From NCBI RefSeq assembly GCF_902459465.1, contig NC_047082.1:2542001-2606000 (forward strand): a stretch of 64,000 nt of DNA, read 5' to 3'. Shown here piece after piece: positions 35,831-63,559 of the stretch (positions are counted from its first letter, which is position 1; each line of letters opens with the position of its first letter). The translations under genes were made by a program, and so were the position numbers. The stretch is from Asterias rubens (taxonomy: Eukaryota). The notes beneath the pieces were generated by a model that was given only the letters and a program-made list of their open reading frames with translations, was not told the origin of the DNA and did no database searches.

Positions 35831-36319
35831 GCCGGTGTCAGATGCAATTGTGTCCGCCATGCAATACTCTCCGCTCCGGACACTTTTGCATATGCAATCG
35901 TGTCCGGGGCTATGCAAAAACCGTCCGGTGGACCGTGTACATGACTAATCTGTACATGTGTGTGCGCGCGTAAGCGAGCGTGCATTACTGAACCTACGTA
36001 TCCCAACATGAATATTTTATGATTGCAGCGAATACCCAACGGCCAAACATTTCCCATGTCATTCATGACATGCACTTAGCTTGTAAAAAAATGGCGAACG
36101 TGTCCCGTCGGCAATGGGCGTTTAGTTTACTGCAAGGACGGTTTTGCACGGGGGCGGACACAACTGCATATGCAAATGTGTCCGGGCGGACACAATTGCA
36201 TTATGCAGCAGCGTCCGGGCGGAGACGAATGCATATGCAAAACCGTCCGGCGGACATTATTGCATATGCAGTCTTCCGGATAGTATTGCATAGAGGACAT
36301 AATTGCATGCGACACCGGC
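35831..36319. mobile_element. MITE family G (~490 bp, internal CGTCCGGGCGGACA..TGCA sub-repeats)
   Basis: TIR GCCGGTGTC(AG/GC)ATGCAATTRTGTCC at both ends; no clear target duplication. Second copy at 37811-38288; fragments at 52657-52791 and 62443-62491. Confidence 0.8.
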
Positions 36320-37810: not shown

Positions 37811-38288
37811 GCCAGTGTCAGATGCAATTGTGTCCGCCATGCAATACTGTCCGCTCCGGACACTTTTGCATATGCAATCGTGTCCGGGGCTATGCAAAAA
37901 CCGTCCGGTGGACATGGATTGTGTATGACTGTACATGTATGTGCGAGCGTGCATGCACTGAACCTACGTATATGCAGCACGAATTATTCACGTATTATTT
38001 ATGATTTCCCATGTCATTCATGACATGCACTTAGCTTGTAAAAAATGGAGAACGTGTTCCGTCGACCAAGGGCGTTTAATTTACTGCAAGGGGGTTCTGC
38101 ACGGGGGCGGACCCAACTGCACAAGCAAATGTGTCCGTGCGGACACAATTGTGTTATGCAACAGCGTCCGGGCGGACACAATTACATTATGCAACAGCGT
38201 CCGGGCGGACATTATTGCATATGCAATAATGTCCTCCGGATAGTATTGCATAGAGTGCATAGAGGCCATAGTTGCATGCGACACCGGT
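37811..38288. mobile_element. MITE family G, second copy
   Basis: Direct near-duplicate of 35831-36319. Confidence 0.8.
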
Positions 38289-51100: not shown

Positions 51101-51445
51101 AGATACTATGTCAGATTTTTTGCAGATTTGACCCAAGGTATTTTGATGGGGGTCGAAAAAGTTACAAGCTTTCATTTGAGCCATCGCTCGAAAAAGTCTG
51201 CCAATTATTAGTAGCAGTGAAATAAAGTGCTCAAAATAAGTTTTTGTCGGGATCTCGACAATATATCACGTGACCAATTCTTATGTGTTTTATAAGAAAC
51301 GTTTTAAATTGTTCTCATGGTTCCTGACCATTAAAAGTAAAAGTTAAACTTGTTTTCGTTAGAGCGGGTGATACTCTTTAAAATACCATTCACTCAAAAA
51401 GAACTATTTATTAATGTTTCGGGCCAAAAATCTGACATAGCATCT
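51101..51445. mobile_element. Second Kolobok-like MITE family (345 bp)
   Basis: TTAA|AGATACTATGTCAGATTTTT ... AAAAATCTGACATAGCATCT|TTAA, TIR match 19/20. Confidence 0.85.
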
Positions 51446-53046
51446 TTAATAATGTATCAACCAAATTGCATTAAACGTAGGGTCAAACTTATATAACGCC
51501 CTCGACCAAGTTTGTGTACAATTTATCCAAAAGCTTACTTGTTCTAAAGATGGTAATAGTAGTAAGCATCCTGCGAAAATGTTTGTACAAAAGTGCTTAT
51601 GTTGATTTAAAAACCCATTCACAGAATGTCAACGGAGTTGAATCTCCAAACATTCCTAATAAGGGGACTCTGTGAGATTCACATTTCTGTGATGTCAGTT
51701 TGTGAACGCTGTGGCCGATATGTGATATGCACCTGCCGTCATCTCGCTAAATGTTGATGTATTGTTCAACGTTCTTGATGAAAGTACTGTAATTTTTTTC
51801 GCTGTTTTCTAAGCAAGTAGACACTTGGCTCAGCAAAAACTTTCAGAGGTGCCTTTTATTGTGTCTTTATTGATAATTTTGCCCATAAATCAACAATAAG
51901 ATGACAAAAGCATCCTATATAACGTTACCCTACTATAAGTTTATGATTTTTTTTTAATGAGTTTACCTAACTACTTTTGTAATAAATAATTTTGCAATGA
52001 ATTTTGAATGACTGAAAAATAAAGAATTAAAATCCTTTTAAATAAATATTTTTGTTTTCATCAGTAAAAGTGTTTTCTAACTTATGTTGGTTCAACCCAT
52101 AGAATAAATCAATTGTCTTTGGGGTCAAATACTATGTCTGAACAAAACTTTAGCTGTGACAGAAAGTGGTGCTACTAAAATCTGCCACTTAAGAAGAGTT
52201 CCCATTGGTGGAAAGTTAAGTCATTGGTCAATCTCTTGTTAAATTAACCAATCAAAGACAAACACTGAAGTAGGCCTAATCTTGATTGGCTGCCTTCTGC
52301 AGGTGGATTCCTAGGATGTTGGAAAACTTTCTTTGTTGAAGGGAGGGTAATGTACTTTAGGGAGTGGGCCAACCCTTTTCAAAGCCTGTGTGGCCAACTT
52401 CTGATTATTGAACTGTGAATAATCTTGCAGGTACAGCTATTTGGAAAATACCCTTTGAAATCTCACAAAAGAAATTTACACATGGTTGTACTGCAAGATT
52501 ACTATTTATCTACATTTTCCCTATTTATCCCCACCCCCATGCAAAGCTTTCAAATGCGACTAGAACAAACCAAAATCGGCATTCGGCCGAGAGATTGTTA
52601 AACTAGCTAACCAGTCCTTATAACAGTGTTAACCGCGGTGGTGCAAACCACCACACACAATGCAGCAGGGTCCGGGCGGACATGATTGCGTATGCAAAAC
52701 CGTCCGGCGGACATTATTGCATATGTAATAATGTCCTCCGGATAGTATTGCATAGAGGACATAATTGCATGCGACACCGGCAAGTCCTGAAAGTCGGCCA
52801 CCGACTTTGGCAAGTCGAGTAAAAATAGTCTTGTACCCAAACTCTGGATGTACTATATCTGCATTATAATAACGCATTCTAAGTAATTGGTTTGTGTGGG
52901 GCACTTGCTATGTCACCTAACAACAAATTGGACATCGATTCCCCTTGAATATTGAGGAAGAAAGTAAAGTTAGTGTCAATAAAAGTTGCATTTTGGGGGG
53001 TTCTGAGGTATTATTGTAGCCCAAATGCGATATTAGTTGTGCCTTC

Positions 53047-60387
<7,341 letters not shown>

Positions 60388-61120: not shown

Positions 61121-62182
61121 ATACCCAGATTGCAAAATACTTCTATTAAAAGTCCATATTCCGATACTTGACCGAAAAAGAATCTACTTAAATTATGTAA
61201 ATCAATACTCAACTGAAAATGTACTTGGATTCTTATTTGAAGAAAAACAACAGCATTCCTTTTTGTTTTCTGACAATGCATCAATTCAAGTAATATAGGA
61301 ATATAGCTCTGGAATAGATTTTTCACAAAGTTTTTGAAAAAAATATTTCAAACCTCGAATTTTTAATTGTTAAAGTGTCTATAATTGTATTATTTAACAT
61401 TTTTTAACAAAAGGGCATTTATGAATGGGAATAAAACAGCAGTGACTGGTTCTTAAACGTCCGTTTAAAACCTTGCAGGGTCGTTGCCGTGCGATCTTTA
61501 TCACACGGCCGCCGACCCTGAAAAGGTAACATTGTCGGACCTATTTATAGGTGTGATGCAAATTGTCATTTTTTAATTGAAGTAAGATGACAATTTTATG
61601 TACTTAAAATTTATTTTTTCAAGCTTTTTGGTGAATTTTCATAGTAAAGAAATGTGGGAAATTTTTATTAACTATATTTAATTTGAAAGCTTACTATTAG
61701 TCTTCTTATCTTATCTGTTTATCGACTGACTGAAATTTTATCTTTTGTCATTCCCTTCTTGTTTTATTTTAATGTTTTCAGTATTTTTCAAAATAATGAC
61801 CTCGGATAGAAGGAATTATGAGTTTATTAATAATAATGTGTGTTAGGAGTTTGAACAAATAGAACAGAATGAAGTGTTTTTTAATTAATTGTGCACCATA
61901 CTTTAGGTTTATTTTTATTATGTATGAATTTATTTGGCAACTTTATGAAAAAGGCATTCAAACTAACATCATTCGGGTATCAGTAATTGGTTTTCAATTG
62001 ATGGGACCAACAGGAAACATTTATATATTTATTATATTTTTAATCTTATTTAATCACATCTTTTTAATTATAAATAAACAAATTAATCTTTCGCTTATTG
62101 GATGTATATTAGTTTTCACTGCATACTGCGATTCGATATTGTTGCACACTTACTGCAGTTTTTGACAACTTATTGTCGGGAT

Positions 62183-62396
62183 CTCGACAATATATCACGT
62201 GACCAATTCCAAAATCGGCATTCGGCCAAGAGATTGTTAAACTAGCTAACCAGTCCTTATAACAGTGTTAACCGCGGTGGTGCAAACCACCACCGCGGTT
62301 AACACTGTTAACACTGTTATAAGGACTGGTTAGCTAGTTTAACAATCTCTTGGCCGAATGCCGATTTTGGAATTGGTCACGTGATATATTGTCGAG
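62183..62396. repeat. Long fold-back palindrome
   Basis: Arms 62183-62282 and 62288-62396 are exact reverse complements apart from a 9-bp duplication (AACACTGTT) in the right arm; loop is CAAAC. Confidence 0.95.
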
Positions 62397-62546
62397 CTCC
62401 GGATATCCACCATCCAGGGGCCGGGTGGTGCAAACCACCACACACAATGCAGCAGGGTCCGGGCGGACATGATTGCGTATGCAAAACCGTCTGAGATATT
62501 ATTTTAGCCCAAATGCGATATTAGTTGTGCCTTCTTGGAGTCAAAG

Positions 62547-62716
62547 ATGGAGAATGCAGAGTTAATGCCCACGTACGGCGTGTACATGGTGTATGTTTTA
62601 GGTGGTTTTCTGGCCAGTGTTGTTGGAGTAGTTCTGCTATTGATTACGTTTTGGACTCTGTACACACACAGAGTACACCAGAAATATCGGCACATACCTG
62701 GACCGAAGTTAGGACA
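62547..62716 (+). CDS. Exon 1 of a second CYP46A1-like copy (rest of gene outside the window or absent)
   Basis: 170 nt from ATG 62547 to donor CA|GTAAGT, with 3 differences from 53059-53228. Homology continues about 100 nt into intron 1 (to ~62815) and then stops. No exon 2 is seen before base 64000. Confidence 0.8.
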
Positions 62717-63559
62717 GTAAGTATAAATTATGATTTAATTCAGGTTTTCTTATGTAGTGGATTTGCCGGTACTATGAAGGCCTTTGTTGGCGTTTCTCGG
62801 TTTGTGTGTGGTCCTAAAAATAGTCTAGGTTCCTAGACCATTGGTGTTGCGTGGTCACACAAAACCAACGTTCCGATTATGCACGGCAAAAACTGTACAC
62901 AGGACATTTGCAACGACGGGTCATAACTTTTTTATTGTTTTTCGGCAAATCTCCCCCGACTTTCCGGTGGAGCCAATCAGAGGCTGCGTTGCGGTTGGCT
63001 CATGAATAATTCATCAGTGTTGTGCATGCAGTGTGTACAATGCATGCAGTAATTGCGTTGCATGGCTTTTGCTATACTCTGCATGTGTGTGTGTGGGTAT
63101 AATTATGTTTTTATCGGAGTATAATAATGTCCAGATCAGTACGATTTGAAACTTTGCCACATGGTGGAAATACGATAAAGGAAGGTTTGCGGTACCACCA
63201 CAAACCTTTCTATGTATAATATCCAGATCCAGACTACTGCATTGCCATGATGCAGCTTGAAATGCGATCGTGGCGTTATGCTCCCGACGTGCCAGGGCCC
63301 ACACTGATGAAGCCTGTATTGGCTAAACAATTTGCTTATAGTTAAATAGTATTGCTTAGCAGAAACTGGTTACCAGCCAATTTTTAATTAAATTTGAAAT
63401 GTTGTAGACTTATGCCTAGTGCCCACCTAAATTTTTGGATAGTAAAGCAATTTTGTACAGTATTTTCTGCTTTAATAACAGATATTAACTGGTGGGCCCT
63501 GTAGTGTTATTCACAGTGAAAGTTTTTTAATCTTGGGGGAAGGAAATCTTGAGGGATTC

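What the first reader, a model, noticed from the sequence alone, without database searches (positions are those of the whole stretch)
62183..62430. ~214-bp palindrome apparently self-primed from a 6-bp hairpin, 150 bp upstream of the start codon
In the template (around 52638-52654) GTGGTG-caaac-CACCAC is a small hairpin. In copy 2 that stem is extended to 100-bp arms with one 9-bp slippage duplication. About 25 nt of untemplated-looking sequence (containing GGATATCC) follows, then synthesis resumes at the same CCG(C)GGTGGTGCAAACC. The far end of the arm is another mini-hairpin (TTGTCG..CGACAA). A near-perfect palindrome this long should extrude a cruciform, be fragile, and give dsRNA if transcribed, which could silence copy 2 or mirror its factor-binding sites.
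Basis: partly seen in the sequence, partly recalled or inferred. Interest (0 to 1): 0.7.

Follow-up and report, generated by a model that had tools for sequence, protein, structure and literature searches.

The report
Fold-back palindrome upstream of P450 gene
A 214-base near-perfect DNA palindrome in front of one of three tandem cytochrome P450 genes is real and is best read as a copying accident, in which a new DNA strand folded back on a tiny natural hairpin and copied itself; it is a clean natural example of a known mutation type with no sign of a function.

Summary
The left arm is 62183-62282, the loop is CAAAC (62283-62287), and the right arm is 62288-62396. The right arm is a perfect copy apart from one 9-bp slippage duplication. 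About 27 nt of unique filler follow, then a second copy of the CCG(C)GGTGGTGCAAACCACCAC hairpin. The ATG lies 151 bp further on.

Two paralogous promoters keep the unfolded order X-Y-A-hairpin-B: copy 1 in the window, and a closer copy 3 about 15 kb downstream. Copy 2 has also lost the 634-bp Y segment. The deletion joint sits in both arms, so the right arm was copied from a strand that already carried the joint.

Short-read contigs from two studies contain the inverted arm-filler-hairpin joint, cut exactly where the 31-mer map predicts. One metagenome holds 3 of 4 sampled centre words. Two other runs join A directly to the hairpin, so the allele is probably polymorphic. Cleaned contigs of X1 and X4 lack the centre, which leaves some doubt.

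The best reading is a hairpin-primed snap-back template switch within one multi-switch replication or repair event. This is a known kind of event, unusually long here. Silencing, dsRNA and cruciform effects are untested. Interest is low to moderate.

The parts
62167..62209 (+). X: fragment of a very high-copy interspersed repeat, carrying the mini-hairpin and a CACGTG..CCAAT stretch. Its last 27 nt form the outer part of the left arm.
   Evidence: 764 candidate places genome-wide; the repeat runs on past X in other copies; 1694 candidates; many loose ends with the repeat's consensus on both sides of X.
62173..62190 (+). Mini-hairpin TTGTCG-GGATCT-CGACAA inside X. The perfect self-copy ends 2 nt into its loop (left 62183, right 62396).
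   Evidence: DNA fold -6.7 kcal/mol, z = -7.
62209..62210 (.). Deletion joint X|A. It removes 634 bp that copy 3 keeps (C22:2619003-2619636), with 1 nt of microhomology (C). It is mirrored at 62369|62370 in the right arm.
62183..62282 (+). Left arm (100 nt): the end of X plus segment A, continuous with the upstream DNA.
62277..62293 (+). Pre-existing hairpin GTGGTG-CAAAC-CACCAC, the axis of the palindrome. It is present unextended in copy 1 (52638-52654) and in copy 3.
   Evidence: The fold is weak, -5.9 kcal/mol.
62288..62396 (-). Right arm (109 nt): reverse complement of the left arm plus a 9-bp tandem duplication (62299-62316) between GTTA repeats.
   Evidence: The X4 contig 62323-62453 covers its outer part.
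62397..62423 (+). Filler of about 24-27 nt. It occurs nowhere else in the genome and is not templated by nearby sequence. Organism B carries a 3-nt CGC indel variant.
   Evidence: best local match 6-7, equal to the shuffle null; one place in 417 Mb at up to 3 mismatches; table 4.
62424..62441 (+). Second, direct copy of the hairpin, with CCG at 62421-62423 in place of CCGC. Collinearity with the ancestral promoter and exon 1 resumes here.
   Evidence: (D1).
62547..62716 (+). Exon 1 of P450 copy 2 (CYP46A1-like). Its protein sequence is identical to exon 1 of copy 3.
52570..52654 (+). Segment A plus hairpin in copy 1, the ancestral unfolded state. It is preceded by Y, not by X.

Best explanation
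This is a real, derived structural allele of the promoter of the middle gene of three tandem CYP46A1-like P450 genes. It was made in one error-prone, multi-switch replication or repair synthesis. Inferred steps: the growing strand left the repeat fragment X and re-annealed 634 bp ahead at segment A, using 1 nt of microhomology. It copied A through the small hairpin GTGGTG-CAAAC-CACCAC. Its 3' end CACCAC then snapped back onto its own GTGGTG and used the nascent strand as template, copying A and then X backwards for 109 nt. It slipped once between two GTTA repeats, giving the 9-bp duplication. It was dislodged inside the X mini-hairpin and gained about 25 nt of non-templated filler. It then re-engaged the original template about 21 nt behind the point of departure, so the hairpin is present twice, and continued into the promoter and exon 1. 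What is shown: the anatomy, the ancestral state in two paralogs, and the presence of the right-hand joint in independent data. What is inferred: the order of the steps, their occurrence in one event, and the polymerase involved. No function is implied. The known effects on the gene are the loss of 634 bp of upstream DNA and an inverted second copy of 85 bp of promoter-proximal sequence plus an E-box/CCAAT-like stretch about 160 bp before the ATG.
For: Copies 1 and 3 both have the order X-Y-A-hairpin-B, with the same 6-bp hairpin unextended. Segment A occurs only at the three paralogs, so the arms are local sequence and not a mobile element. The X|A deletion joint is present in both arms, so the right arm was copied from a strand that already carried the joint, as self-templating predicts. 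The 9-bp duplication lies between pre-existing GTTA repeats 9 bp apart. The filler is unique in the genome and not locally templated. On reality, X1 has an 87-nt contig at 62367-62453 with no differences, which is exactly the unitig predicted from the 31-mer map of the palindrome allele. X4, from another study and organism label, has a 134-nt contig at 62323-62453 that joins inverted A, inverted X, filler and hairpin. X25, a marine metagenome, holds 3 of 4 sampled centre words, and 43 of the 47 words in that query are centre-specific. Known mechanisms of this kind are snap-back SD-MMEJ (PMC5728401, PMC2943611), fold-back insertions at breaks (PMC11724301) and intra-strand template switching (PMC5453318).
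Against: The cleaned contigs of X1 and X4 do not branch at 62293, and neither run holds the centre words. The centre therefore rests on the assembly plus 3 words in one metagenome. The X4 contig does not break at 62367, as a two-armed structure should make it do. Published snap-back and fold-back tracts are mostly 5-34 bp (PMC11724301), several-fold shorter than 109 nt. The return point lies behind the departure point, an order that the four-point survey of human-chimp events did not observe (PMC5453318). A single event cannot be told apart from a deletion followed later by a fold-back.
Confidence: 0.55

Rival explanations
1. Two separate events. First an ordinary 634-bp deletion joined X to A. 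Later a classical hairpin-mediated template switch at a replication fork extended the 6-bp hairpin into 100-nt arms, either intra-strand or onto the lagging-strand template (ODIRA-like).
For: Once the deletion exists, any template, nascent or parental, gives the mirrored joint. Short inverted repeats are known switch points between leading and lagging strands (PMC10766183, PMC5453318).
Against: It needs two rare events within 90 bp in a promoter where two paralogs show neither. No deletion-only allele was seen. The runs without the palindrome, X2 and X6, also keep Y.
Confidence: 0.25
2. The centre of the palindrome is an assembly or sequencing artefact. An inverted A-X segment really lies before the hairpin, but the left arm does not run directly into it as the assembly shows.
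For: The cleaned short-read contigs of X1 and X4 run through 62293 into the ancestral continuation without a branch, and neither holds the centre words. The X4 contig shows only one continuation of the arm at 62367.
Against: X25 holds 3 of 4 sampled centre words, and almost all words of that query are centre-specific. X1 breaks exactly at 62367, as two arms require. Read-level fold-back chimeras do not turn forward again after 109 nt with a filler that short reads confirm. Palindromes are reported to be under-represented in PCR-based libraries (PMC4057610). A low-depth centre path beside 3-4-fold deeper shared words could also be removed in graph cleaning, which is my inference.
Confidence: 0.1
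3. A fold-back transposon or MITE inserted upstream of copy 2.
For: This genome holds many fold-back elements and MITE-like palindromes (earlier notes). The outer arm is a piece of a high-copy repeat.
Against: 85 nt of each arm is locus-specific sequence found only at the three paralog promoters and collinear with the ancestral order. No other copy of the unit exists and there is no target duplication. The repeat fragment X is internal to its family, not a terminus.
Confidence: 0.03

Closest known systems
Snap-back synthesis in SD-MMEJ / polymerase-theta end joining (Drosophila, mammals; PMC5728401, PMC2943611, PMC4912351)
   Same: A 3' end anneals to a short inverted repeat in its own strand and copies itself. 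It then unwinds and rejoins the other side. The outcome combines a deletion, an inverted templated insertion, non-templated nucleotides and minimal microhomology.
   Different: Experimental tracts run to tens of nucleotides at most, whereas the self-copy here is 109 nt. No break site or polymerase is known here.
Fold-back inverted insertions at double-strand breaks in yeast (PMC11724301)
   Same: Templated inverted duplications are primed by microhomology next to the break and captured by end joining.
   Different: Most are about 5-34 bp and depend on Pol delta plus NHEJ. Here the tract is several-fold longer and is accompanied by a 634-bp deletion and a re-copied hairpin.
Intra-strand template-switch (quasi-palindrome) mutations and the four-point model (Ripley; PMC5453318, PMC8794818)
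   Same: A pre-existing short inverted repeat is converted into a longer perfect one by transient use of the nascent or complementary strand, creating new hairpin-forming DNA.
   Different: Those events are usually short and return ahead of the departure point. Here the return point lies behind it, duplicating the hairpin. Filler and a long forward skip are added.
Large palindrome formation from short inverted repeats near a break or fork (Tetrahymena rDNA and yeast models, from my own knowledge; ODIRA, PMC10766183)
   Same: A short inverted repeat serves as the fold-back primer.
   Different: Those give kilobase-to-chromosome-scale palindromes, dicentrics or hairpin-capped DNA. Here synthesis aborted after about 110 nt and rejoined the same chromosome in the forward direction.
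MMBIR / FoSTeS complex rearrangements (PMC8421209)
   Same: Several template switches occur in one synthesis, with 0-3 nt of microhomology, slippage and insertions.
   Different: The scale here is 250 bp rather than kilobases to megabases, and one switch is onto the nascent strand itself.

Membership tests
Hairpin-primed (snap-back / intra-strand) template-switch inverted duplication | The new sequence is the reverse complement of the immediately adjacent sequence. | tested here: met
   the arms are perfect apart from one 9-bp duplication.
Hairpin-primed (snap-back / intra-strand) template-switch inverted duplication | A short inverted repeat pre-exists at the axis in the ancestral state. | tested here: met
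   GTGGTG-CAAAC-CACCAC is unextended in copy 1 (52638-52654) and in copy 3.
Hairpin-primed (snap-back / intra-strand) template-switch inverted duplication | Synthesis returns to the original template, giving collinear sequence after the insertion, with little or no microhomology and sometimes extra nucleotides. | tested here: met
   Collinearity resumes at 62421/62424 after 24-27 nt of unique filler.
Hairpin-primed (snap-back / intra-strand) template-switch inverted duplication | The template was the nascent strand itself rather than the parental complementary strand. | tested here: inconclusive
   The mirrored deletion joint requires self-templating only if the deletion and the fold-back were one event.
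Hairpin-primed (snap-back / intra-strand) template-switch inverted duplication | Dependence on a particular polymerase or pathway (Pol theta, Pol delta, BIR). | not testable with these tools
   This needs genetics or biochemistry.
Fold-back transposon / MITE | Multiple dispersed copies of the unit. | tested here: not met
   Segment A is found only at the three paralog promoters.
Fold-back transposon / MITE | The inserted unit is foreign to the empty site and flanked by a target-site duplication. | tested here: not met
   The left arm is the ancestral sequence itself. Only the right arm, the filler and the second hairpin are extra.
Sequencing or assembly fold-back artefact | Seen in one library or one technology only. 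| tested here: not met
   The right-hand joint appears in contigs of X1 and X4, which come from two studies. Centre words appear in X25. Support for the centre is thin.
Giant palindrome from a hairpin-capped break | Arms extend for kilobases or to the chromosome end. | tested here: not met
   The arms are 100 nt and forward collinearity resumes.

The most novel reading that the evidence does not exclude
This is a naturally segregating germline allele showing that a nascent DNA strand can copy itself for more than 100 nt from a 6-bp hairpin within a single repair or replication event. That tract is several-fold longer than tracts seen in break-repair assays. The resulting perfect 100-bp-arm palindrome then persists in wild sea-star populations, next to an apparently intact gene, across at least two organism labels. 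If it is also transcribed, it would be a newborn long hairpin-RNA locus of the kind proposed for template-switch-born miRNAs.
Probability: 0.3. Interest if true: 0.5.

Novelty: new member of a known kind. Interest (0 to 1): 0.3.

Why it matters
The case is unusually readable. Two paralogs preserve the before state, every joint can be read to the base, and the mirrored deletion joint tells which strand served as template. It extends the known length range of hairpin-primed self-copying in an animal germline. It also shows how promoters of tandem detoxification-type genes diverge through a single complex mutation. As a probably polymorphic perfect palindrome, it could serve as a natural test of how long such structures survive and whether they affect the neighbouring gene. 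It does not reveal a new kind of element or mechanism.

Tried and rejected
- **Local templating of the filler:** the best ungapped match within about 500 bp on either strand, and in the ancestral copy 3, scored 6-7, the same as shuffled fillers. A by-eye 12/14 resemblance to 62452-62466 was not significant.
- **Distant templating of the filler:** it has one place in the whole genome at up to 3 mismatches.
- **Cloning-vector origin of the SacI/EcoRV/SacII-like sites:** dropped, because CCGCGGTGG is present in all three native copies (my recollection of polylinker sequences, not tested).
- **Transposon end at the X|A joint:** rejected, because the repeat family continues past X in other copies.
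- **Y as an excised transposon:** rejected, because Y is unique to the paralogs apart from its first ~25 nt.
- **Copy-2-specific error in segment A:** rejected. Copies 1 and 3 each carry one private change and copy 2 has the shared state.
- **JGI metagenome pattern scans:** the centre pattern and an allele-neutral pattern of A both gave 0 hits.
- **The look-up of encoding contigs with the 57-aa exon-1 ORF:** found two contigs, but no DNA was served.
- **Depth-based zygosity:** not used, because the tool warns against reading depth from contigs.

Full report
**What is there.**
- The window is G000:C22:2542001-2606000 of a 417.6-Mb animal genome. Earlier notes of this scan call it a sea star (I did not check this).
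- At 62183-62396 the sequence is a 214-bp palindrome.
- The left arm is 62183-62282, the loop is CAAAC at 62283-62287, and the right arm is 62288-62396.
- The right arm is the exact reverse complement of the left, except that the 9-bp unit TTAACACTG occurs twice (62299-62316).
- In the left arm the tetranucleotide GTTA already stands twice, 9 bp apart. The duplication is therefore what one primer slip between those repeats would give.
- As single-stranded DNA the region folds at -139 kcal/mol, against -32 for shuffles, z = -27.6.
- In 284 kb of this genome that I could sample, other palindromes are 32-87 nt per arm. The two with arms longer than 44 nt are only 92-93% matched. None approaches this one.
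- After the right arm come about 24-27 nt of filler (62397-62423), a second direct copy of GGTGGTGCAAACCACCAC (62424-41, D1), and then the promoter-proximal sequence. The ATG is at 62547.

**The genes.**
- Three tandem genes have start exons at 53059, 62547 and, beyond the window, C22:2619827. ExxR and heme-binding exons are present in all three.
- The ExxR exon hits Pfam p450. Two exons match human CYP46A1 best among solved structures.
- Exon 1 of copy 2 is identical in protein to that of copy 3, and nothing suggests copy 2 is broken.

**The ancestral state.**
- I fetched 30 kb beyond the window and compared the three promoters.
- Copies 1 and 3 share one order:
  - X, a ~65-bp fragment of a very high-copy repeat;
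  - Y, about 600 bp found only at these paralogs apart from its first ~25 nt, which continue the repeat;
  - A, 85 bp ending in the small hairpin GTGGTG-CAAAC-CACCAC;
  - B, continuing to exon 1.
- Copy 3 is the closest relative of copy 2: 99% over 62421-62755 and 97% over the 178 bp before the joint.
- Copy 2 differs from this order in five ways within 250 bp:
  1. Y (634 bp) is missing, with X joined to A at 62209|62210 through one shared C.
  2. The A-plus-X sequence is repeated in inverted orientation directly after the hairpin.
  3. There is the 9-bp slip.
  4. There is the filler.
  5. The hairpin is present a second time, preceded by CCG instead of CCGC.
- Segment A occurs nowhere else in the genome. 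The filler occurs once in 417 Mb even at 3 mismatches and has no local template.
- X is an internal piece of its repeat family, not an end.

**Is it real?** All runs available were Logan contigs, and only one read-laying run was allowed.
- A 31-mer map of the assembled allele predicts a unique unitig at 62367-62453, bounded on the left by words shared by the two arms and on the right by words shared with the paralogs.
- X1 (organism A, possibly the source sample) contains exactly that 87-nt contig with no differences.
- X4 (organism B, another study) has a 134-nt contig at 62323-62453. It runs from inverted A through inverted X and the filler into the hairpin, with a 3-nt CGC insertion after 62420.
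- An inverted A-X block in front of hairpin-B therefore exists in real DNA from two studies. It has had time, or lineage divergence, to acquire an indel.
- The centre is less secure. In both X1 and X4 a contig runs through 62293 into the ancestral continuation without a branch, and neither run holds the centre words.
- A query made almost entirely of centre-specific words (43 of 47) found one holder. This is the marine metagenome X25, with 3 of 4 sampled words.
- Palindromes are reported to be under-represented in PCR-based libraries (PMC4057610). A low-depth path between deeper shared words may also be removed in graph cleaning, which is my inference.
- X4 also lacks the break at 62367 that two arms should cause. 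The left-arm link consists of only three unique words next to a repeat present in thousands of copies, so cleaning is again possible. I leave this as unexplained.
- I put the palindrome as assembled at about 0.85-0.9.

**Polymorphism.**
- X2 (a marine metagenome; a 1388-nt contig, also found) and X6 (organism C; a 1062-nt contig) join A directly to hairpin-B ("skips 148").
- X6 carries the end of Y in front of A. X2 carries 948 nt in front of A, which I could not read.
- Downstream they match copy 2 without a difference. X2 extends through 62757-62796, where copy 3 is unrelated.
- X6 has no filler contig, although contigs of that run cover the flanks.
- Taken at face value, copy 2 exists with and without the palindrome. 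The caveat is that de Bruijn contigs can thread through paralogs that share more than 31 identical bases.

**Mechanism.**
- The mirrored deletion joint is the most informative feature. Whatever served as template for the right arm already carried X next to A.
- If all five anomalies arose together, which is the parsimonious reading because two paralogs show none of them, that template can only have been the newly made strand itself.
- The proposed sequence of steps is inferred:
  1. A forward skip from X to A.
  2. Copying through the hairpin.
  3. Snap-back of 3'-CACCAC onto GTGGTG.
  4. Self-copying for 109 nt with one slip.
  5. Loss of the primer end 2 nt into the loop of the X mini-hairpin. 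There the template's own TTGTCG can displace the nascent TTGTCG from CGACAA.
  6. Untemplated addition.
  7. Re-annealing about 21 nt behind the departure point.
- The priming hairpin is weak, at -5.9 kcal/mol and not different from shuffles. That is typical of the 4-9-nt primer repeats used in snap-back SD-MMEJ (PMC5728401).
- The alternative is a deletion first and a fold-back later, possibly onto the lagging-strand template as in ODIRA (PMC10766183). It cannot be excluded.

**Comparison with known systems.**
- The event belongs with snap-back and fold-back templated insertions (PMC2943611, PMC5728401, PMC4912351, PMC11724301) and intra-strand template-switch mutations (PMC5453318, PMC8794818).
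- It differs in scale: 109 nt against mostly 5-34 bp.
- It also differs in returning behind the departure point, an order not observed in the human-chimp survey (PMC5453318).
- It is not a fold-back transposon, not a giant palindrome of the hairpin-capped-end type, and not a read-level artefact.

**Consequences.**
- Nothing here shows a function.
- The allele removes 634 bp of upstream DNA. It also places a second, inverted copy of A and of the CACGTG..CCAAT stretch of X about 160 bp before the ATG.
- Cruciform extrusion, fragility and hairpin RNA are plausible from general knowledge but untested.
- No run recorded as RNA held the centre words, which is weak negative evidence.

**Verdict.** It is a well-resolved new example of a known mutational process. 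Interest is low to moderate.

Noticed in passing
window 62167-62209; also 51238-51305 and C22:2618960-2619027: A ~65-bp piece of a very high-copy interspersed repeat with a conserved mini-hairpin TTGTCGGGATC(T/C)CGACAA followed by CACGTGACCAATTC. The first-look searches gave 764 and 1694 candidate places, and the read-laying output lists many loose ends with the repeat's consensus on both sides of it.
   Followed up: partly
window 62447-62491; 52660-53001; 36203-36319; 38156-38255: A second high-copy repeat built of GGACAT(G/T)ATTGC-like sub-repeats. Copy 1 holds about 340 bp of it, while copies 2 and 3 keep only the first 45 bp. This accounts for the 297-bp difference between copy 1 and copy 2 just before exon 1.
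   Followed up: partly
window 58594-58754; C22:2613580-2613745; C22:2626818-2627002: An older palindrome with 76-87-nt arms at 92-93% match (measured in copies 1 and 3) sits at the same position near the 3' end of all three P450 copies. It predates the gene triplication and is probably a MITE-like fold-back.
   Followed up: no
C22:2616843-2618824 (copy 3 upstream): Copy 3 carries a ~2-kb insertion relative to copy 2 in the intergenic region. A fourth copy of the upstream region (C22:2628205-2630319) is not followed by a P450 start exon within the 30 kb fetched.
   Followed up: no
window 62420/62421: The contig of organism B (X4) has CGC inserted in the filler relative to the assembly. The palindrome-bearing allele therefore exists in at least two sequence variants.
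   Followed up: no
window 62802-62850: Another very high-copy repeat starts in intron 1 of copy 2, marked by a set of loose ends at 62817-62820.
   Followed up: no
C22:2619486-2619566 (inside Y of copy 3): An imperfect (76%) inverted self-match lies inside the 634-bp segment that copy 2 has lost. It might have contributed to breakage or stalling there.
   Followed up: no
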